Below are positions 52,316 through 63,900 of a DNA stretch of 64,000 bases, one piece after another. A program made the translations under genes and the position numbers. This DNA comes from Ophelia neglecta (lineage: Eukaryota), in the NCBI GenBank assembly GCA_965285935.1, contig OZ260661.1, positions 143,716,001 to 143,780,000 of the forward strand, given 5' to 3'. How positions within the stretch are numbered: position 1 is the stretch's first letter; the number at the start of each line of letters is the position of its first letter. The notes below the pieces were generated by a model. The model did no database searches. It was not told the origin of the DNA and was given only the letters and a program-made list of their open reading frames with translations.

Positions 52316-52639
52316 ATGGGTATTGGTATTATAATAGTAAAGACGATTTCATATGTGCACCAACTATTATCAAAACAGCAGCCAAAACGTCATTTAATAA
52401 TAAGCTCTAAGCTTTCGCTGTCAATTGTGCAATTATTTATTACACTTTATAATATTAATGTTTTGTGTATAAGGTATTATCCCGGGTGATACTGCGCATG
52501 CCTAAGCGCGCGCAATACAAATCCATTCCTGACTCAGCTGGAAAACTGGTCAGACGTGCCAGCGACGAGGCTCCTGTCTTAGACGTTTTCTCCACAACGG
52601 ATATAGGTAATATCACTTTCGTTGTTATTCAGCATGCCC

Positions 52640-52950
52640 GGGGGGCATTGCTGCTAAGTCCCTGGGGGACAAAAACATTGCCGGGGGCAATGTATTAGAT
52701 AAATATAGTAATTTTAAACTCAAGTCCCTGGGGGACAAAGACATTGCAGGGGGCAATGTATTAGATAAATATAGTAATTTTAAACTCAAGTCCCTGGGGG
52801 ACAAAGACATTGCCGGGGGCAATGTATTAGATAAATATAGTATTTTAAACTCAAGTCCCTGGGGGACAAAGACATTGCCGGGGGCAATGTATTAATCTAA
52901 TTAATTTGTTTAAGTCCCTGGGGGACAAAAGCTTTGCCCGGGGCAACGTT
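52640..52950. repeat. ~65-bp tandem repeat (about 4.5 copies) in the 5' region of the YR element
   Basis: Unit aagtccctgggggacaaagacattgccgggggcaatgtattagataaatatagtaattttaaactc. Confidence 0.95.
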
Positions 52951-54112
52951 TGTAATAAAATTCCTAGACAAAGCTTTACTAAGCTTTATTTATTTAAATA
53001 AACTAGTTCGATGTGTTATCGTATTTTAGCGTATATATCACCCCAAGTGTTATATTCTTGTACCTTATAATTAGGAGTCGGTTACAGGAATTGTGGTCCC
53101 ATTTGGTTTTATGTACCCAGATCTCTTTATGTTTGCAATTAATCCCAGTTATTGGTCAATATGAATGCTAAAGAGCTACGGCAGTGGACATCTAGATGCA
53201 TTATAGAAAGTGGCACTTTCGAACATGTATATTTGCTTAGCAAAACCCCAAGGCAAATCCAGTTAGCCGGGTATTCACAGACTTAATAAAACCACCTTTT
53301 CTATGTTCTGTGATGGCATTTGTCGTGTACAAAATTGTCGCTTTTATTGTTGAAATAATCGGGTCAGAAGTGACTGTGTGGTTTTGCCTGGTCAGCCTTT
53401 GTTACAAAATGTAAAAGCTTCACTTAACAGCTTTCACTCGGTAGGATTTTGGCGATATAGCTTATGTAACAGCAGGGTATGTTAACGAGGCATGACCTAC
53501 AGTTTATTTAAGACTTTAGATGCAGGTTGGCCAGGCTAGGCTAGGCCAAGGCTTGGCTCTACAATTCTTCTTGGCTACACAAATAGTCAACCCTTCTAGT
53601 TGACCACAAATAACTGTTGGTTACATTTAGCACATGCCCTCCTTTCCAGCTTTCTAGCCTTTTGGAAACATGTTAGAAATTCAGGTTGCAGTTTCTTGAT
53701 TTAAGGGCCTTGCATTTGGTTTAACTTTGACCTGTCATTGACTTTTGGCCTATATTGACAAAGGGATATAAAGAGTATTGATGCTTTATATTTCTAACGT
53801 TATACACATATAATTGTATATTAACATAATGTTACAGATATTTGATAAATAAAACCATTCTATTACATTGAGAACGTGCAGTAGGGGCGACCCACATTCT
53901 GGATCTTTCCTATTCTTCTGAAATATTTTCTTAACTGTTTTGTTAATTATTAATATTAACTGATCGGTGCTTGGCCATTTCTATTTTGGTGTAATTAAGG
54001 GTCCTTTTATCAAAACTATATTTTCAATACGTTGCATATCTGCTACGTAATAGATATGTTAACTTTTTCGATTTTATGGAAGGTATTTTACTTTTAATTT
54101 CTTTTCCGCAGG

Positions 54113-55353
54113 ATGGCTGCTGTAATAATCTTGAAAAAAGACCATAGCCTAGTGGGAAAAAGTCCATTCGCTGTAGTGATGGCGCTGAAAGAATTTGGGG
54201 GCATACTTCCCACTCCCTTGGCGAGGCTGAAACGCAGTCACCCGTTGGAAAATTACTCGTCTAATGATCTCATAGAGAATTTGGAGGGTATTATGGGTAT
54301 TCCGGCGACGGAAATCCTGACCTTGGCTCAGGTAGAGGGAGCGTCTGATCCCACACAAGTGCCGACAGAAAAGCTCCAATATGTGCTACATACTGCTATT
54401 GTCGAAGCAAATAGGGTAGGCCAACCTCAAGGAGTTACCCTGGTGAAAGAGAAGTAGGATACCCCACATCAAGAAGTTACTAGGAAAGAACCTACAAATG
54501 TATCTAACAAGGTAAAATTTTATTCTGCTTATACGAGAGTATGCTGTGAACGATTCGTAATAGGCCTATATATCTTTTAAGTCCACGCAGTTATTCTGTT
54601 ACATGTGAATCCCTTTGCATGAGACCGTTAAGTCGTCTTATTTAGTACATTTTAGGTGGGCCTATTTTATCACAATGGGCACTTCATTCTTTTCAGAGGA
54701 AAGACAGAGACGATGATTTAGAATCCAGACTAAAGTTGCTAGAACAGAAAATGGAACACGAGTCTGGGAGTGAAGTTGACCTGGCCTTACAACAGGTGAG
54801 GAGGTTACAGGGGTCAAGAGCCCTCATGCAGCCACACTTGGTAATCTCTAGTGTTGAGAATCTGGTCGAAGTAGCCCTACGGGTAAATCATCCCCAAGTT
54901 GAATATTTCAAGCGAGCTCTCCTGGAATTAAAAAAACACGAGGATGCAGAGGGCCTCGGACAGCTGCTAACTCAACTTTTTGGATCGCCCGAAGATAAAA
55001 AAGTTGCTACAGCGGTAACCGCCTGGCTTAAGGTGAAGAAAGCAGAAGAGGCGACTGGGCATTCCAAAAAAGATCAGCTAGAGGAAAGTGCTAAACCATA
55101 TCGGCACCCAGCACCAATGCCTCAGCCAGGCATGTTTCAAATGCCAGGGTTCCCACCTTTTCCAGACTACTTTCCACAACCCTACCCCGCTTATTACGGT
55201 GGCTTCGGACCCAGACGCGGCAGAGGTTCCTTTAGGCGCGGTAGAAGGGACCCCGCCCAGAGAATGGTGGCCAGATGTTATGGGTGCGACTCTGCAGATC
55301 ATAGGGTTGTGGACTGCCCTGTCATAAAAGCAATGAAAATTGAAAAAAAGTAG
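54113..55353 (+). CDS. Gag-like protein of the YR retrotransposon, predicted spliced (leader exon from 54113; exon 54697-55353)
   Basis: RG-rich segment and CCHC knuckle CYGCDSADHRVVDC; acceptor TTTTCAG|54697 is in frame; phase-0 donors at 54416, 54443 or 54512 (using 54512 includes the TAG at 54455). Confidence 0.75.
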
Positions 55354-55904
55354 ATATTGGAATATATATATAGACCTCATATTATAGAATCGACATCTAG
55401 AGAATTTAGACCATTGAATTTACTGTACGACCAACTTCGCCTATTAAATTAGATTCTTGCATTTCTTAGCATTTCGTCAGTCTTCTTTATCAGCACGCAA
55501 AAGGATCGTATATTTGAATATACCCAACTTAGACGTCATAGTTACCTTATTGGTAGTAAATACTATGTGGGATACGTATTAAAAAATTGGACTATAATGA
55601 GAAGTTCATAGTTTAAAGAATCGGCATCTTTGTTTAGTTATATTCTATTATATTATATTCAAATTTGATAGTCCTAGAATGTTTTTTGGAAACTAATTTA
55701 ATTTCTGACCCAATTGCTACTACTTCTAAAATTTAAAGTAGTAAATATTTGAGGCAAGAATACCTGCCCACCCCGGCAAGTTTCCGCCCCAACCAAAAGG
55801 TACCTAAAACACCTTAGTGGAGGCTATCCTTCACGCTGGTTGGAAGCTGGAGCCTTGTTGGGAATTCAACCACACGGAGTTATCATATCTTAATCATTTT
55901 GTAG

Positions 55905-58151
55905 GTATCAGGCAATGGTGATTACGTAACCTCGGATGAAAAACCGTCCCCAGAACCAACGTTCGACCCACAAAAGGCAGCTAAAAGGGTAAGAACAGCT
56001 CCGGTGTGGGTGGATTCCCAGGGAAAACGGCTCCAGCCCCAACCAGATACGCCTCCAACAGCCGAGCAAGTGGCCACGCCTAATACAGACACACCTAGTA
56101 TTTCAATTTTGGCATTCAGGGATCCTGAAAACTTCATTGCCGGCGAACTTCACAACCAAGCGGCGGAATGGGAAAAAATCCTCCCCCAAACTGAAGTGGG
56201 CAAGGAAGCATTAGATTGGATTTTGCGTGGGGTGTGCATTCAAAATTACTTTCAACCCTATCGAGGAAAATTTAGAGGGAAACAGTACAATGCTGAGTTG
56301 CCACAAAAATATTGCCAACCTAATAACGCCTCCTGTGTGGGGCATGAAAGTTTCATTTCCGACACCTTGCAAGAGTGGATCGAGTGCGGAGCAATTCAGC
56401 TATTAGGGAAAGTCGGGGAAGTACAACCACCACTTATGGTCATGCCATTGACTGTCGAACCATCGAAACCCAGACTTTGCCATGATGAACGTTTCCTGAA
56501 CTTATGGATAAAAGACCTCCCTTTCAATCTCGATACCCTTAAAGATGTTCCTAGAATTGTTCACAAAAACTTTTTTCTCACCTCCCTCGATCACAAATCC
56601 GGTTATCAACATGTCAGGCTTAACCCAGAAAGCTACAAATACTTCGGCATTTGTTGGGAAGGGTACTATATGGTATATGTGACTCCTCCATTTGGTTTCA
56701 AAGCAAGTTGCTACATCTATCACACCCTGACCGGTTTAGTGGCCTCATATGGCAGAGAATTGGCAGTCCCCACTTTGGCTTATATAGATGACTCTTTGAA
56801 CTCGCAGTTCGCCAACTCTTTGAAAGATAGGCTAGATAATTACCAGAATGCTGCAAATTTAAACGAGGCTCTGAGGTCTCTGTATATTATGTGTCAATTA
56901 TGGACAAGGCTAGGTTATACCATTTCATTGAAGAAGAGCGTTCTTATCCCGACTCAAATCATCCGCTTTCTGGGTCTGCTCACAGACAGCACTCTTGAAG
57001 CTTTTATCCTCCCACAAGACAAAAAAGAGTCATTTGCCACTCTTAGAGAAGCTATCCTCAAAAACCGCACAGTAGATATGAAGTCTTTGCAGAGACTTCA
57101 AGGAAAGTGTATATCGTTGACACTAGCTGTACCTGGAGCAAGGCTTTACATATCTGAAATGTCAAAAGCCATTTCATTGGCAGCTAAGAATAGCAGGTGT
57201 ATATCATTGGCAGGTGGCTTGAGAGAAGAAATTGAGCACTGGCGTTTTGTCGACACCTGGCAAGGTTGCGTCCCTTGGAGACAGGAAATGCACCTGCAAA
57301 TGGCAATGGCCACGGATGCTTCTAACTTTAAGTGGGGAGCTATGTTCTTGGATGTAAAAGGCCATCCAAATGAAGAGATAGGAGATTTTTGGCCCCAGGA
57401 AGATGATCGCCCTATACACCTAAAAGAAGCCAGTGCCCTTCTACAGGCCCTCCGGTCGGTCAGGAAGAATATTCAAGATCACAGAGTGGATGCATTTGTA
57501 GATAATATGGCAGTCCTGTCCGCGTGGAATGGACAGAAAGCCAAGGATGCCAGGCTAACAAGTCTTATAAAGAAAATTTTTTGTTTCACTCAACTGGCCA
57601 ACTTAGATCTCCGCCTGCACTTTGTACCTAGCCAGGAGAATCCCGCGGATGCACCATCAAGAAAACTCAGTTGGTTGGATGCCATGCTGGCGCCGGAAAT
57701 TTGGGAATTAGTAGATGGCAGATTTGGACCCCACTCAGTAGATTTGATGGCCTTAGATAGTAATGCTATGCAAAGATGTGGAAAACCTCTCAAGCACTTT
57801 ACCCCTTACCCCACTCCTTTGTCTGATGGGGTAAACGTATTCTCACAAGACATCTCCAAAGAACAGGCGCCATATGTATACCCACCCCTTAGCTTGGTGG
57901 GACCTCTCTTGAAGTTTCTCTGTGAGAGCAATATTCAGGCATGCACTTTTGTAGTCTTTGATGTGGTCCCAAGGCCATATTGGTGGCCCCTGCTGAAACA
58001 ACACGTGTCCGACACTTTGATACTCGGCGAGCAGGGAGAAAAGGGAGTTCTTTTGGTACCTACAAAATCTGGTTATGTTCGAGATACCTTTGGTCTTCGG
58101 TTTCCCCTGATTGCATTCAAACTTGTTTTTGGAGCGGTTTCAACTCAATAG
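55905..58151 (+). CDS. RT, RNase H and N6-adenine-methyltransferase-like protein
   Basis: SLDHKSGYQHV, PFG, AYIDD, FLG; RNase H ATDAS, HLKE, VDN, NPADAPSR; MT-like VDLMA..FSQD..YVYPP. The frame opens right after TTTTGTAG. Confidence 0.93.
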   Translation, partial: VSGNGDYVTSDEKPSPEPTFDPQKAAKRVRTAPVWVDSQGKRLQPQPDTPPTAEQVATPNTDTPSISILAFRDPENFIAGELHNQAAEWEKILPQTEVGKEALDWILRGVCIQNYFQPYRGKFRGKQYNAELPQKYCQPNNASCVGHESFISDTLQEWIECGAIQLLGKVGEVQPPLMVMPLTVEPSKPRLCHDERFLNLWIKDLPFNLDTLKDVPRIVHKNFFLTSLDHKSGYQHVRLNPESYKYFGICWEGYYMVYVTPPFGFKASCYIYHTLTGLVASYGRELAVPTLAYIDDSLNSQFANSLKDRLDNYQNAANLNEALRSLYIMCQLWTRLGYTISLKKSVLIPTQIIRFLGLLTDSTLEAFILPQDKKESFATLREAILKNRTVDMKSLQRLQGKCISLTLAVPGARLYISEMSKAISLAAKNSRCISLAGGLREEIEHWRFVDTWQGCVPWRQEMHLQMAMATDASNFKWGAMFLDVKGHPNEEIGDFWPQEDDRPIHLKEASALLQALRSVRKNIQDHRVDAFVDNMAVLSAWNGQKAKDARLTSLIKKIFCFTQLANLDLRLHFVPSQENPADAPSRKLSWLDAMLAPEIWELVDGRFGPHSVDLMALDSNAMQRCGKPLKHFTPYPTPLSDGVNVFSQDISKEQAPYVYPPLSLVGPLLKFLCESNIQACTFVVFDVVPRPYWWPLLKQHVSDTLILGEQGEKGVLLVPTKSGYVRDTFGLRFPLIAFKLVFGAVSTQ

Positions 58152-58185
58152 ACTATGCATAATTAGTGTGTTCTCATTGTTGCAG

Positions 58186-59406
58186 GGCAATGAAAGTCAT
58201 GACTGCGAGGATGTAGATGTCGCCCCACTGGATTTCCGTCTTCGGGAAATTGAGAGGAAAGCAAAGTCCACACCCTATGAGCGTAAAAAAGAAGCATTAG
58301 CCAAAGAACTGGACAGTTTTTTGCATCGCTTACCAGGCAAACCAACGCTCAAAACTATGGATGACAGAGACCTCAGACGGTTTTTAGTATTCAAAGACGG
58401 CAAGGGGAAGACTGTTGTCCATACAACCTTGTGCCCTCTATTAGGACAGCGGGATCCAGGGGACTGTGGGTGCCCAAGGAGGCTTACAGCGGGTACTGTT
58501 ATATCCATGGTAGGTCAGCTTAAGGCTTTTCTACAAAGGCTCGGTAGGGGTAGTGCGTGGGATGAGCTCAAAACAGAAGGCAACCCCGCTTACGCCTCCT
58601 CCGTTTCAGAATATGTAAGAGTAATACAGAAAGAGCATGCAATCGCTCACGTATCTCCCAAACAGGCGAAACCATTATTTGTTGAAAAATTGGAAAAAGT
58701 GTGTGACTATTTAAAACGTGAGAGCGAATGCGTATGTTCATCGGCAAAAGATAAGTTTATGTATCTACGAGATAGAGCCTTTATGACAGTCCAATTTTTT
58801 GCCGGCGACCGAGCCAGTGATCTCTGCAAGACGTTGGCGCAAGAGATCAAGAGGTTACCTGATGGTACCGGCTTTGTAGTAAACCACACGCAAGGGAAAA
58901 CGGCCAGCTCTTCTTCGCCGAGGGTTGTGTACATAAAGAAATGCGAGAATAGAAAAATCTGTCCTGTAACTAGCCTTGAAGACTATGTCTCGGCAGCATC
59001 ACGAATGGGTGTTGATTTGAAGACCGGGTACATATTTCGAAAAACAAATAAACATGGACAGGTTTTGCAGTTCCCAATAACGTATGATGCAGCTCATGAT
59101 CAACTTAAGAAATACTTGCGTCAATTAGGTGAATATGACGGGGAAACCCCCCACAGCCTTAGAGGGGGTTGTGCTGTTACCATGCTCCTTACAGGAGCAG
59201 CAGAGACTGTCGACGAAGCTCAAGCTCACATTGGATGGAAATCAACTACCATGCCAGACAGGTATGCACGTGCGAAAGGGGCTCAAACTTTGAGAGCCAG
59301 TGAAAAGTTGAGGAAAGCCATAGATAACGAGTCAAGCGTTACGGCCAAGGATGCTAGTAAATTATTTGGCGGTCTTGAGTACCATGAACTAGATAATGCC
59401 TTTTAA
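58186..59406 (+). CDS. Tyrosine recombinase
   Basis: Catalytic set R (GDRASDL), K (GKT), HxxR (PHSLRGG), H/W (HIGW) and Y (DRYA) all present; acceptor TTGTTGCAG|58186 is in frame. Confidence 0.93.
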   Translation, partial: GNESHDCEDVDVAPLDFRLREIERKAKSTPYERKKEALAKELDSFLHRLPGKPTLKTMDDRDLRRFLVFKDGKGKTVVHTTLCPLLGQRDPGDCGCPRRLTAGTVISMVGQLKAFLQRLGRGSAWDELKTEGNPAYASSVSEYVRVIQKEHAIAHVSPKQAKPLFVEKLEKVCDYLKRESECVCSSAKDKFMYLRDRAFMTVQFFAGDRASDLCKTLAQEIKRLPDGTGFVVNHTQGKTASSSSPRVVYIKKCENRKICPVTSLEDYVSAASRMGVDLKTGYIFRKTNKHGQVLQFPITYDAAHDQLKKYLRQLGEYDGETPHSLRGGCAVTMLLTGAAETVDEAQAHIGWKSTTMPDRYARAKGAQTLRASEKLRKAIDNESSVTAKDASKLFGGLEYHELDNAF

Positions 59407-60130
59407 TAATGATTTATTTCTTGGTCTGAAGGAGAAATTACAATAGAAAAACACCGACACCGTTATACACTTAACAACTAATGACTGTCATTTAAAAATA
59501 TGGATTTATGTAAACTAATTGTATATATTTTATTCAGAGGTTGTAATAATGTTGAATGAAAATAAAATTTGGTCATTCCAGTTTTCCCTTAGCTGTTTGT
59601 AATAAGGTTTGGGAGGGGAATAACTCTAGCTGTTGTTTCCAAATGGAAAAACTGGGAAAAGCGACGTTCAAACCTCCAATCCTGTTGACTTCCCCCACAC
59701 CTTAAACCAAGAGCCAAGGCAGGGGCGGTATCACCCGGGATGTTATTATATCCCGGGTAATACTGCGCATGCCTAAGCGCGCGCAATACAAATCCATTCC
59801 TGACTCAGCTGGGGAGAAGTGAAGTCGGGTAGAGCAGAGAGTGTGTTTTAAGTTTAATTATAGTGTATTAACGCCAACAAAATTTAGCCTGGAGAAAGTT
59901 ACCCACCCAACACCCCACCCGGTCAAGGTATATGCCACTGCTTTGGCCCTCCAGTCCTGTTGACTTCCCCCACACCTTAAACCAAGAGCCAAGGCAGGGG
60001 CGGTATCACCCGGGATGTTATTATATTATGATTTTAAGAACTATTTGTAGAACCCGTTTTTCATTTAAATAATATATGTTATATTATATTAAGTGACATC
60101 TTTGGAACGTTGCCTGCAATTATTATTAAT

Positions 60131-60338
60131 TATTATCAAAACAGCAGCCAAAACGTCATTTAATAATAAGCTCTAAGCTTTCGCTGTCAATTGTGCAATT
60201 ATTTATTACACTTTATAATATTAATGTTATGTGTTTAAGGTATTATTATGATTTTAAGAACTATTTGTAGAACACGTTTTTCATTTAGATAATATATGTT
60301 ATAATATATTAAGTGACATCTTTGGAACGTTGCCTGCA
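60131..60338. repeat. Uninterrupted copy of the ~210-bp sequence into which the YR element inserted
   Basis: Matches 52365-52480 joined to 60027-60118 with only a few substitutions. Confidence 0.95.
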
Positions 60339-60754
60339 TGAAGCATTATCTTTTTGAAGCATTCGGTATAAGATAAAAGGAGGTTCCCATTTCTTATATA
60401 CATGTTCATTAGTGACGTTAAGCCGGGTGGTACGATTATAATGATTAACCTTTAAATGCATTTATTAATATTTATTTCCAGGAAATAGCTAAATTACCAG
60501 ATTTGACTTCAAATATGTGTATAAAATGTTTATTTTGATCATATTGTTTTTCGAGAAAATTGGATAAATATTGCGTAGCAGGACAAAAGTCGGCATATGT
60601 TCATATCTCAAGCATAAGTAGTATTACCTAGCAGTCTTCTGGTGCCGATCACTGCTATACAATACACATACTACTCGATAGGATACACAAAGTGGGGGCT
60701 CTATTTCTTTCACGTAGACACCGGAACGTCATTTAAGAAAGTGATAATAATAGT

Positions 60755-60929
60755 AATAACATGATATTGACGGGTGTTACGCTACTTCAGTGTCCCTCCA
60801 TAAATTATTAGCAGCCCTTCATAGTCATAGCACCCTCGGCTACGCCTCGGGCGCTATGACTATGGCGGGCTGCTAATAATTTATGTCGGGCCACTGATAT
60901 AGCGTAACGCCCTGCAAAATCATGTTATT
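60755..60929. mobile_element. ~175-bp palindromic (fold-back) element
   Basis: Arms aataacatgat..gggtgttacgcta..ataaattattagcagccc..catagtcatagc and their reverse complement flank a central cctcggctacgcctcggg. Confidence 0.8.
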
Positions 60930-63900
60930 GGTATATTGTCCATCATTATACTTTCATAATCGGCATCATCGCTTTGCTTTGTATTCTGGGGTTGCTCTCT
61001 GTGCGGTACAGCATAATCATCGCTCACTGAGTTAATTTCAGCTTTGCTTTTAGCACCTGCATTTTTGGATTTGTCGACCTCAGCATTCACATGATATTCT
61101 GTATTTTCAAGAGCCACAGTTACATCCTGATACTCAGTATCAACAGATTCGTGGTTACTGTAAACGTTAGAGCCGTTTGTCAGGGTGTGTGAAGTGTGAA
61201 CGCCATAGCATGTATTGTTAGAAACAGTATAGCTTGGCCCTTCTGATCAATTTTTTCCTATTCTGTGGATGTAAGCAGAACTTATAATAGTAAGTTATGT
61301 ATTTAATTTAACAAATTGCATATTTGCATCAATAAGTAGAGTAACAGTATCAGCTTTATTTAATTTTTCTGGGTGGCCCTCTTGGTAGCGTCCATTGGGA
61401 CTTAGTGGAGGTCTCCCAACCAAACTAATCTCTCGATTGCAAATACTTATTTTGTTAATAATTGTCTTTGTGTAGCATTATGGTTGGAATATATATATTT
61501 TTTGCATGTTATTATTGATTTGGTTGAATAAAAGTTCAGTTCAGTTCAGTTCAGTACTATCTCCAAAGTAGGTGCATATTGCTTAAATCTCTACCTTTGT
61601 TTCCGAAGAACAAAGATCAACACAATGACTAGTAGTGCAGCGACAATGACTACTACTCCTACTCCTAGACCAATAAAGATGCCTTGCCCTGGAAGTTTAT
61701 AGTTGTTTACTGCTTTCATCATTTGAGTTGAAAATTAATTCTATGATTATTATCTTATCGATGTATAAAATGCCGCCTTGGATTGTAATTCATAAGGTGT
61801 CGGAAACAAAATAGCCTTTAAATGATTATTGTTCATATAATATATACATTATTTATCGAAACAAAAACCAAGCCTTTTTTAGGAAATCGTGTGATATGTT
61901 TAAGTGGCCACTCTAACATGCCTTCACAACTGACAATGTCTTGGTATAATCTTTTAAAAGTTATATCTATTAGATAACGTACCCTTGTTCTGAGCCTGGG
62001 AAGTGGTAGTTACATCAGTATTTTTCTTTGAAATCGAGGTGGTAAAACGTAAACTAGAGGTTAGGCGTTCGTCCTCTGTGGTTGTAAGATGGTTAGTCAA
62101 TTCGGTCGCCGTAAAACTAAAGGCTATAAACAGAAATTGTGAAATGCCGAAACGAGATTGGGAAACGGAACAGACTAGGTGTCATGCATGGTAATTGTAG
62201 TATACTAGTAATGTTATATGGCCGCTTGGCTTGTATTAGTGTGTCTGTATGATTGGCATTTAAAATAGGGTCAATAATAGAATTCCTATTGTTGTTTACA
62301 CAATTTATATAACGCTGAATCAATAAAACATACCCTTAAGCAGGTTACAATCAATAAAGTAGGTTATAAAAAAGTGATAACAAATAATGAATCAATGGAC
62401 AGAGTAAGAAGCCTGCACGCTCATAGTGTCTCCTGGCATTTGAAAGCCAGATGGTCATAGTGTCTCCTGGCATTTGAAAGCCAGATGGTCATAGTGTCTC
62501 CTGGCATTTGAAAGCTAGCTGGTCATAATGTCTCCCGGCCTTTGAAAGCTAGCTGGTCATAATGTCTCCCGGCCTTTGAAAGCTAGCTGGTCATAATGTC
62601 TCCCGGCCTTTGAAAGCCAGATGGTCATAATGTCTCCCGGCCTTTGAAAGCCAGATGGTCATAATGTCTCCTGGCATATGAAAGCCAGATGGTCATAGTG
62701 TCTCCTGGCATTTGAAAGCCAGATGGTCATAATGTCTCCTGCCTTTGAAAGCTAGCTGGTCATAATGTCTCCTGGCATTTGAAAGCCAGATGGTCATAAT
62801 GTCTCCTGCCTTTGAAAGCCAGCTGGTCATAATGTCTCCTGCCTTTGAAAGCCAGATGGTCATAATGTCTCCCAGCCTTTGAAAGCTAGCTGGTCATAAT
62901 GTCTCCCGGCCTTTGAAAGCCAGATGGTCATAATGTCTCCCGGCCTTTGAAAGCCAGATGGTCATAATATCTCCCGGCCTTTGAAAGCTAGTTGGTCATA
63001 ATGTCACCTGGCATTTGAAAGCCAGATGGTCATAATGTCTCCCGGCCTTTGAAAGCTAGCTGGTCATAATGTCTCCTGGCCTTTGAAAGCTAGATGGTCA
63101 TAATGTCTCCTGCCTTTGAAACCAGATGGTCATAATGTCTCCTGCCTTTGAAAGCCAGATGGTCATAATGTCTCCTGCCTTTGAAAGCCAGATGGTCATA
63201 ATGTCTCCTGGCATTTGAAAGCCAGATGGTCATAATGTCTCCTGCCTTTGAAAGCCAGATGGTCATAATGTCTCCTGCCTTTGAAAGCCAGATGGTCATA
63301 ATGTCTCCTGCCTTTGAAAGCCAGATGGTCATAATGTCTCCTGCCTTTGAAAGCCAGATGGTTATAATGTCTCCTGGCATTTGACCGAGTATAGTTACAC
63401 CCCATATAATTCAAGCCATTTAGCAAATAGTCTAGACTCAGAATAACTGCATGGTATTTATATAGATGTGGAGAAAATCTATATTTCTATTCAATTTGAA
63501 TACTTAGTTTATCATTTTATTTTAAGTGCACTGAACTATACTGCAGGCTTTTAGCAAATCTTAAAGGAATTTATCCTATTCGCCACAGGAAACCAATGTA
63601 CATTCCACAGTGCGGATGTGATGACGTTTAAAGGCATCTTCGACTAGACAAGATACTGAATTTTCAAAATCGGAAAACGCCCTATTACCCTGAAAGGCCC
63701 ACGAGAAACCCCTACCTTAGTCCATTCGGATAATGATTAGTGTTTTGAAGGCACTGTATGTCATGTAAAGACCGATACGGTAAAAGTACAATTAAGGCCT
63801 CTACAAACAACAGAAAAAAAGAACCAAAGCCGCCTACGTCTATCATCAGGTGTCCCTGTTGTCTTGAACGCATCTACTTTCTCCTCCGATTTCGTAGCGT

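What the first reader, a model, noticed from the sequence alone, without database searches (positions are those of the whole stretch)
59725..59766. Lox-like inverted-repeat site at the predicted circle junction
Seen: the B1-A2 junction reads gtatcacccggga-tgttattata-tcccgggtaatac, i.e. 13-bp inverted arms (one mismatch) around a 10-bp AT spacer. Joining the real termini (B2 end plus A1 start, tcccgggtgatac) gives perfect 13-bp arms, extendable to 16 bp with one mismatch. Known: tyrosine recombinases such as Cre, Flp and Xer bind inverted arms around a short spacer, and DIRS-order elements are thought to integrate from a circular intermediate. Inference: this is the donor att site of the encoded YR, giving a candidate animal recombinase/site pair.
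Basis: partly seen in the sequence, partly recalled or inferred. Interest (0 to 1): 0.8.

Follow-up and report, generated by a model that had tools for sequence, protein, structure and literature searches.

The report
Lox-like site of a DIRS retrotransposon
A young retrotransposon that encodes a tyrosine recombinase carries, exactly where its two ends would meet, a 14-bp inverted repeat around an 8-bp spacer. Related elements in other animals keep that symmetry through paired base changes, so it is probably the DNA site this recombinase cuts and joins.

Summary
At 59728-59763 two 14-bp inverted arms (13/14 here, 14/14 in sister copies) flank an 8-bp spacer. It is the only such repeat in the 64-kb window, and it sits on the B1|A2 boundary of a 7,546-bp split-direct-repeat DIRS-order element (52478-60023). 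The element has a zinc-knuckle Gag, RT/RNase H, and a tyrosine recombinase (YR) with an ALOG domain and all six catalytic residues. The genome holds ten copies of this junction context, 98-99% alike. Their ends are invariant, their flanks differ, and there is no target-site duplication. A paralogous empty site lies in the window. The chromosomal break always falls after spacer base 7, one base from the right arm, as with Cre on loxP. A second family here and seven elements from other assemblies (YR 38-58% identical) keep the same arm-GGAT-N8-ATCC-arm layout with compensatory arm changes (14 of 18 pairs; 0/500 shuffles). Five of them break at the same position. I read it as the recombinase core site of the end-to-end junction (confidence 0.6). 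Binding and circles are untested. Targets share no spacer homology, only one break polarity is seen, and no tandem or permuted copies exist, so a plain lox-style double-stranded circle is not enough. A single-strand hairpin or panhandle role remains a rival.

The parts
52478..60023 (+). Whole element, 7,546 bp, laid out as A1 - ORFs - B1 - A2 - unique 135 nt - B2
   Evidence: Repeat families D6/D7. The ends were fixed by comparing ten sister copies that have different flanks and by the paralogous empty site.
52478..52541 (+). A1 repeat. Its first base is spacer base 8, and 52479-52492 is the right arm as a terminal half-site.
   Evidence: All 11 A1 starts read TATCCCGGG... after unrelated flanks.
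54736..55353 (+). Gag-like ORF with a CX2CX4HX4C zinc knuckle
   Evidence: Read directly from the translation. Pfam zf-CCHC scores only E 0.18.
56004..58151 (+). Pol ORF: RT, RNase H and a C-terminal extension of about 190 aa (possibly a Dam-like methyltransferase relic)
   Evidence: RVT_1 E 4e-5 and RT_RNaseH E 0.003, both below Pfam cut-offs. The C-terminus has no meaningful Pfam match. Its third-ranked atlas neighbour is a Dam-domain cluster, score 0.93.
58111..59406 (+). Tyrosine recombinase ORF: ALOG (core-binding) domain plus catalytic domain
   Evidence: ALOG_dom E 8e-16 and Phage_integrase E 6e-8. R220, K263, H348, R351, H373 and Y385 are invariant across 12 relatives. PDB 8p5q, the LSH3 ALOG domain, matches at E 2e-7.
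59673..59748 (+). B1 repeat, ending after spacer base 7
59728..59741 (.). Left arm of the internal full site
59742..59749 (.). 8-bp spacer. The B|A break lies between 59748 and 59749.
59750..59763 (.). Right arm of the internal full site, with a private G-to-A change at 59759
59749..59812 (+). A2 repeat
   Evidence: D7, 98% to A1.
59813..59947 (+). Unique 135-nt segment (U) between A2 and B2
   Evidence: No repeat partner. It was used as the marker in the adjacency test.
59948..60023 (+). B2 repeat. 60003-60016 is the left arm as a terminal half-site, followed by spacer bases 1-7.
60237..60250 (.). Paralogous empty target site in the 220-bp tandem repeat that the element interrupted. The break equivalent is 60243|60244, with 3 nt of ambiguity.
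   Evidence: D4/D5. The left flank (ending 52477) plus the right flank (starting 60024) rebuild this sequence exactly.

Best explanation
The inverted repeat is the core recombination site of the element's own tyrosine recombinase. Each 14-bp arm would bind one recombinase monomer through its ALOG/core-binding and catalytic domains, and the spacer would be the strand-exchange region. The internal B1|A2 copy is the inherited template of the site. Reverse transcription recreates the same site when the B2 end meets the A1 start. Cutting and joining one base inside the spacer, next to the right arm, inserts the element into largely non-specific DNA without a target duplication. Shown here: the site's anatomy, its conservation and covariation, the break position, the lack of duplication and the intact catalytic residues. 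Inferred: recombinase binding, the form of the DNA intermediate, and the order and number of strand exchanges.
For: (1) It is the only inverted repeat of this quality in the window, and it sits on the B1|A2 boundary.
(2) The ten copies end identically: all 11 A1 starts and all 9 B2 ends read the same, with unrelated flanks and no duplication. The empty site in the window confirms a clean insertion.
(3) The same layout, arm-GGAT-N8-ATCC-arm, occurs in family 2 of this genome and in L081, L084, L085, L087 (Mytilus galloprovincialis), L088, L090 and L092. L092 carries GAAT/ATTC in place of GGAT/ATCC.
(4) Covariation over nine lineages: 79.6% of cells are paired, against 63% in shuffles and 30-44% in slid controls. 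14 of 18 pairs show changes on both sides, and 0 of 500 shuffles reach the observed value.
(5) The inner four base pairs are nearly invariant while the outer arm varies. That fits protein contact near the cleavage point better than a bare stem.
(6) The break falls after spacer base 7 in F1, F2, L083, L085, L087 and L088. Cre cuts the corresponding strand of loxP at the equivalent position (established knowledge).
(7) The recombinase keeps the catalytic residues R-K-H-R-H-Y and has a core-binding domain whose plant homologue binds DNA sequence-specifically (PMC10927535).
Against: No biochemical or read evidence exists for binding, cleavage or circles, and no RNA runs were found. Targets show no homology to the spacer, which classic tyrosine recombinases usually need. 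All insertions carry the whole spacer on the B2 side, which two staggered exchanges into heterologous DNA would not predict. The internal full site has never been used as a target, and no permuted or tandem F1 copy exists, although lox-by-lox reactions should be efficient. Covariation of the arms is equally expected for a hairpin. Two of the nine lineages (L084, L090) were located by scanning for inverted repeats, which inflates pairing for those rows.
Confidence: 0.6

Rival explanations
1. The repeat works as a structure in single-stranded nucleic acid: a hairpin at B1|A2, or a panhandle between the two ends of the linear minus-strand cDNA. That structure would guide end completion or closure during reverse transcription. 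The element ends would then be set by the polymerase, and the recombinase would act elsewhere or without sequence specificity.
For: The site folds strongly as single-stranded DNA: -21 kcal/mol for the window copy and -26 for a sister copy, z -6.6 and -9.2. Covariation is expected for a stem. In Dictyostelium the DIRS-1 cDNA is mostly linear and single-stranded, the antisense strand, and its internal junction region is essential (PMC7192593). There is no target homology.
Against: The inner four base pairs and the 8-nt spacing hold across recombinases only 38-58% identical, which a stem alone does not require. Mismatches in the arms are mostly not G-T wobbles. The break sits at a canonical recombinase cleavage position. 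A sublineage (L006, L009) transposed with a C-A mismatch in the arm.
Confidence: 0.2
2. The recombinase does use the site, but through a single exchange of the minus (bottom) strand, possibly on single-stranded or panhandle cDNA, with replication resolving the junction. This would resemble integron attC cassettes or CTX phage integration rather than a Cre-type double exchange.
For: All 9 F1 right ends, 11 F1 left ends, 6 F2 right ends and four other lineages show the same polarity, with the break at the position expected for bottom-strand cleavage. There is no spacer homology with targets. No integration into the resident full site and no permuted copies are seen, as expected if only the terminal junction is in a reactive state. 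The bottom strand is the first cDNA strand (PMC7192593).
Against: This is purely inferential. Biased mismatch repair, or selection against the other product, could give the same pattern. A hairpin of the two arms offers one arm duplex, not a two-arm site.
Confidence: 0.15
3. A chance or vestigial terminal inverted repeat with no present function.
For: Each arm contains the self-palindrome CCCGGG. DIRS1-type relatives have long inverted terminal repeats from which a remnant could derive.
Against: Expectation is 0.2 per window anywhere, and far less on the boundary itself. Arms are conserved with compensatory changes across nine lineages.
Confidence: 0.03

Closest known systems
Cre/loxP (also Flp/FRT and XerCD/dif) core sites
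   Same: Two inverted arms of 13-14 bp around a 6-8 bp spacer. The inferred cut is one base inside the spacer next to an arm. The recombinase has an R-K-H-R-H-Y catalytic set and a helical core-binding domain.
   Different: It sits in a eukaryotic retrotransposon. Partner (target) sites share no arms or spacer homology. Only one of the two expected cleavage positions leaves a trace. Nothing is shown biochemically.
DIRS1-like elements: internal complementary region and 3-bp circular junction (PMC3266345; model tested in part in PMC7192593)
   Same: An internal copy of the joined ends acts as template. There is no target duplication. The recombinase is thought to integrate a closed intermediate.
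   Different: This element has split direct repeats, not long inverted terminal repeats. The rule that the same trinucleotide flanks both ends holds only for the window copy, 1 of 9. Here a defined arm-spacer-arm site is visible.
PAT-like (Pat1-like) split-direct-repeat elements (PMC4157794)
   Same: The A1 ... B1-A2-B2 layout with internal repeats downstream of the recombinase, a Gag zinc knuckle, and an extension after RNase H.
   Different: The methyltransferase domain could not be confirmed. No description of inverted arms at the B|A junction was found in the papers I could search. The key reviews by Poulter, Goodwin and Butler are not held.
ALOG-type DIRS1-class retroposons (Iyer and Aravind 2012, PMC3537659)
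   Same: A recombinase with an ALOG N-terminal DNA-binding domain, found in molluscs, cnidarians, echinoderms and amphioxus.
   Different: That paper judged all metazoan copies inactive. Here six copies keep a full open recombinase frame and copies are 98-99% alike.
Integron attC and CTX phage single-strand integration
   Same: A possible one-strand exchange at a site built from inverted repeats, with no need for spacer homology.
   Different: Analogy only. The folded form here would give one arm duplex rather than a two-arm site.

Membership tests
DIRS order (tyrosine-recombinase retrotransposons) | Reverse transcriptase/RNase H together with a tyrosine recombinase in place of a DDE integrase | tested here: met
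   RVT_1 and RT_RNaseH (weak, below cut-offs), and Phage_integrase above its cut-off; catalytic residues invariant.
DIRS order (tyrosine-recombinase retrotransposons) | Insertion without target-site duplication | tested here: met
   Empty site in the window. Nine flank pairs show no duplication.
PAT-like / Pat1-like | Split direct repeats A1 ... B1-A2-B2 | tested here: met
   (D6, D7). The same layout occurs in L085, L087, L088 and L092.
PAT-like / Pat1-like | Methyltransferase-like domain after RNase H (absent in Ngaro) | tested here: inconclusive
   No meaningful Pfam match. The third-ranked atlas neighbour carries Dam in 10% of its members, score 0.93.
PAT-like / Pat1-like | Zinc finger in Gag | tested here: met
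   CX2CX4HX4C read in the ORF 54736-55353. Pfam gives only E 0.18.
DIRS1-like | Long inverted terminal repeats plus an internal complementary region | tested here: not met
   the ends share only a 25-nt inverted match (22/25). The internal repeats are direct.
DIRS1-like 3-bp circular-junction rule | The same trinucleotide at both flanks, one copy from the target | tested here: not met
   the right flank starts with TAT only in the window copy (1 of 9). The junction equals B end plus A start with no overlap.
Tyrosine-recombinase core site (lox/FRT/dif type) | Inverted arms of about 11-14 bp around a 6-8 bp spacer | tested here: met
Tyrosine-recombinase core site (lox/FRT/dif type) | Strand cleavage at or one base inside the spacer edges | tested here: inconclusive
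   The break after spacer base 7 in six lineages fits one of the two positions. The other position leaves no trace, and the chemistry is not testable here.
Tyrosine-recombinase core site (lox/FRT/dif type) | Spacer identity between the two partner sites | tested here: not met
   the six target bases left of the break match the spacer at 1-3 positions of 6.
Tyrosine-recombinase core site (lox/FRT/dif type) | Specific binding of the arms by the cognate recombinase | not testable with these tools
   No protein-DNA tool is available. Needs EMSA or footprinting.

The most novel reading that the evidence does not exclude
The element integrates its single-stranded minus-strand cDNA. The terminal inverted arms anneal into a panhandle or hairpin that presents one recombinase half-site. 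A single bottom-strand exchange one base inside the spacer joins it to any target, and replication finishes the job. This would be a eukaryotic counterpart of integron attC and CTX-phage single-strand recombination. It would explain why DIRS cDNA is single-stranded and why circle junctions have resisted PCR.
Probability: 0.15. Interest if true: 0.85.

Novelty: new member of a known kind. Interest (0 to 1): 0.6.

Why it matters
The specificity of DIRS-order recombinases has never been tested experimentally (PMC7192593). For split-direct-repeat elements, I found no defined recognition site in the literature I could search. This finding gives a concrete arm-spacer-arm site and a predicted cleavage position. 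It also gives a natural series of co-varying recombinase/site pairs from several animals. That makes the integration step directly testable in vitro, and it offers candidate eukaryote-derived recombinase/site pairs. The one-sided break and the lack of target homology also constrain models of how these elements integrate.

Tried and rejected
- Sequence at the break shared between element and target (microhomology): the window copy shows a 3-nt TAT overlap, but 8 of the 9 paired copies do not, so it is coincidence or a weak preference.
- Target consensus: none beyond AT-richness and a frequent TA(T/C) just left of the break.
- More families in this genome: searches with the recombinase protein and with the ALOG Pfam model found only two families plus fragments.
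- L095 (recombinase 34% identical) has a different gene order and no comparable site.
- P0030, P0035 and P0037 gave no DNA.
- L083 and L084 first looked like inverted-terminal-repeat elements. In L083 the 'repeat' is a second, truncated inverted copy.
- The plant ALOG motif YACTGTW shares only an ACTG core with the arms of family 2 and L092, at shifted positions. This is a weak lead, not evidence (PMC10927535).
- RNA or read evidence: only three DNA contig runs from one study, and no RNA. Read laying was not used because the circle junction equals the internal junction and both ends cannot fit in 6,000 letters.
- The reviews by Poulter and Goodwin and by Poulter and Butler are not held, so prior description there cannot be excluded.

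Full report
**What is there**

The window contains a 7,546-bp element at 52478-60023 on the + strand. Its repeat layout is A1 (52478-52541), coding region, B1 (59673-59748), A2 (59749-59812), a unique 135-nt segment U, then B2 (59948-60023). It encodes:
- a Gag-like ORF with a CX2CX4HX4C knuckle (54736-55353);
- a pol ORF with weak RT and RNase H matches and a further extension of about 190 aa (56004-58151);
- a recombinase ORF with an ALOG domain (E 8e-16) and a Phage_integrase catalytic domain (E 6e-8) (58111-59406).

Aligned with eleven relatives, the recombinase keeps R220, K263, H348, R351, H373 and Y385, the canonical catalytic set of tyrosine recombinases. Its ALOG region matches the solved plant LSH3 ALOG domain. 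That domain is the core-binding domain of these recombinases (PMC3537659) and binds DNA sequence-specifically in plants (PMC10927535).

**The observation**

The most economical parse is a left arm at 59728-59741, a spacer at 59742-59749 and a right arm at 59750-59763. That gives 14-bp arms with one mismatch around 8 bp. The mismatch (A at 59759) is private to this A2. A1 of the same copy and both A repeats of every sister copy carry G, which makes the arms 14/14, 16/17 on extension and 22/25 overall. A scan for such repeats finds only this one in the 64 kb, against 0.2 expected, and it lies on the B1|A2 boundary.

**Ends and insertion**

The genome has ten copies of this junction context, 98-99% identical. 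Six have a fully open recombinase frame.
- All 11 A1 copies begin TATCCCGGG..., and all 9 B2 copies end ...GGGATGTTATTA.
- The flanks are unrelated and there is no duplication.
- The internal junction equals B end plus A start with no overlap.
- The window copy interrupted a 220-bp tandem repeat. The neighbouring unit (around 60243|60244) serves as an empty site, and the two flanks rebuild it exactly.

The break therefore lies after spacer base 7, one base from the right arm. Family 2 of this genome (recombinase about 66% identical) breaks at the same place.

**Comparative test**

Family 2 has the same spacer, but its arms differ from family 1 at mirrored positions. I took relatives of the recombinase (38-58% identical) from other assemblies and fetched their DNA. 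Every element with the same gene order showed arm-GGAT-N8-ATCC-arm 190-800 nt downstream of the recombinase stop. These are L081, L084, L085, L087 (Mytilus galloprovincialis), L088/L089, L090/L091 and L092; L092 has GAAT/ATTC at the inner arm.

In L085, L087, L088 and L092 the site coincides with an independently found B|A repeat boundary. B ends after spacer base 7 in L085, L087 and L088; L092 is ambiguous by up to 4 nt. In L083 the A starts of two copies and the B end give the same inferred site and break.

On an ungapped alignment of nine lineages (A1):
- 79.6% of cells pair, against 63% after shuffling and 30-44% when partners are slid;
- 14 of 18 pairs have changes on both sides;
- none of 500 shuffles reaches the observed values.

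Caveat: L084 and L090 were located by an inverted-repeat scan, which favours pairing for those two rows.

The inner four base pairs and the last two spacer bases are nearly invariant, while the outer arm and the rest of the spacer vary.

**Interpretation**

The anatomy is that of a tyrosine-recombinase core site. The break position matches where Cre cuts the corresponding strand of loxP (established knowledge). I take it as the recombinase's site at the junction of the element's ends, with the internal B1|A2 copy as its heritable template. One sublineage (L006, L009) carries the same arm change in both B1 and B2, as expected if B is copied from one template.

**What does not fit a plain lox model**

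- Targets share no homology with the spacer.
- All insertions keep the whole spacer on the B2 side. Two staggered exchanges into heterologous DNA should give both forms.
- A closed molecule made by joining B2 to A1 would hold two identical sites. Yet the adjacency U-B|A-5' region, the signature of a tandem or permuted copy, has 0 matches in the assembly, while the canonical context has 10.

These points favour a reaction confined to the terminal junction and to one strand. The break corresponds to the bottom strand, which is the first cDNA strand. That recalls the single-stranded antisense cDNA of DIRS-1 (PMC7192593). The site also folds into a very stable DNA hairpin. A structural role in single-stranded intermediates therefore remains a rival, or a complementary reading.

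**Classification**

- Split direct repeats, a Gag knuckle and the post-RNase H extension place the element with the PAT-like branch of the DIRS order (PMC4157794).
- The recombinase is of the ALOG type (PMC3537659).
- The methyltransferase domain is not confirmed.
- It is not DIRS1-like in its termini.
- It does not obey the rule that the same trinucleotide flanks both ends, proposed for DIRS1-like elements (PMC3266345).

**Novelty**

An internal circle-junction template and recombinase-mediated integration are long-standing models. In the searchable literature I found no defined arm-spacer-arm site, no mapped break position and no covariation for split-direct-repeat elements. The main reviews are not held.

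Noticed in passing
window 52656-52977; also L083 347-523 and L087 6713-6909: Tandem repeats (66 nt x5 here; 33 nt and about 40 nt in the other two lineages) lie 200-400 nt downstream of the A1 start. Each unit holds small palindromes, such as GTCCC-N3-GGGAC. They could be accessory protein sites, a promoter or a packaging signal.
   Followed up: no
window 58111-58200: The recombinase frame has no in-frame ATG before the conserved ALOG region. It overlaps pol by 41 nt in the +1 frame. A splice-acceptor-like ttgttgcag ends at 58185. Expression may need splicing, a frameshift or reinitiation.
   Followed up: partly
G000 C1:18578800-18584700 (L026, L027, L045, L093): Three tandem units of 2,726 bp contain a partial family-2 recombinase and B1-A2-B2. 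Each B2 end abuts a TATCCCGGG-type arm that is not the family-2 A start, which makes a hybrid site.
   Followed up: partly
G000 C8:58343620-58344300 (L022, L023): A family-2 copy carries one extra A-U-B unit, so two full junction sites lie about 300 bp apart before the final B end.
   Followed up: partly
L083 7690-8640: The B end is joined, exactly at the usual break position, to an inverted, 5'-truncated second copy of the same element. This may be a recombination product of the site.
   Followed up: partly
L081 1-55 and 7120-7174: The 7,174-bp contig closes on itself across the junction site. This is probably how an assembler collapses split direct repeats and is not evidence of a circle.
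   Followed up: no
L006 and L009 (G000 C5:106553128, C7:25663839): These two copies share a T-to-C change in the left arm in both B1 and B2, so the family transposed with an imperfect arm.
   Followed up: partly
window 52362-52480 and 60024-60338: The host DNA around the element is a 220-bp tandem repeat.
   Followed up: partly
window 62300-63374 and 60750-60934: A 33-34-nt satellite-like array and a 91-nt near-perfect palindrome lie downstream of the element.
   Followed up: no
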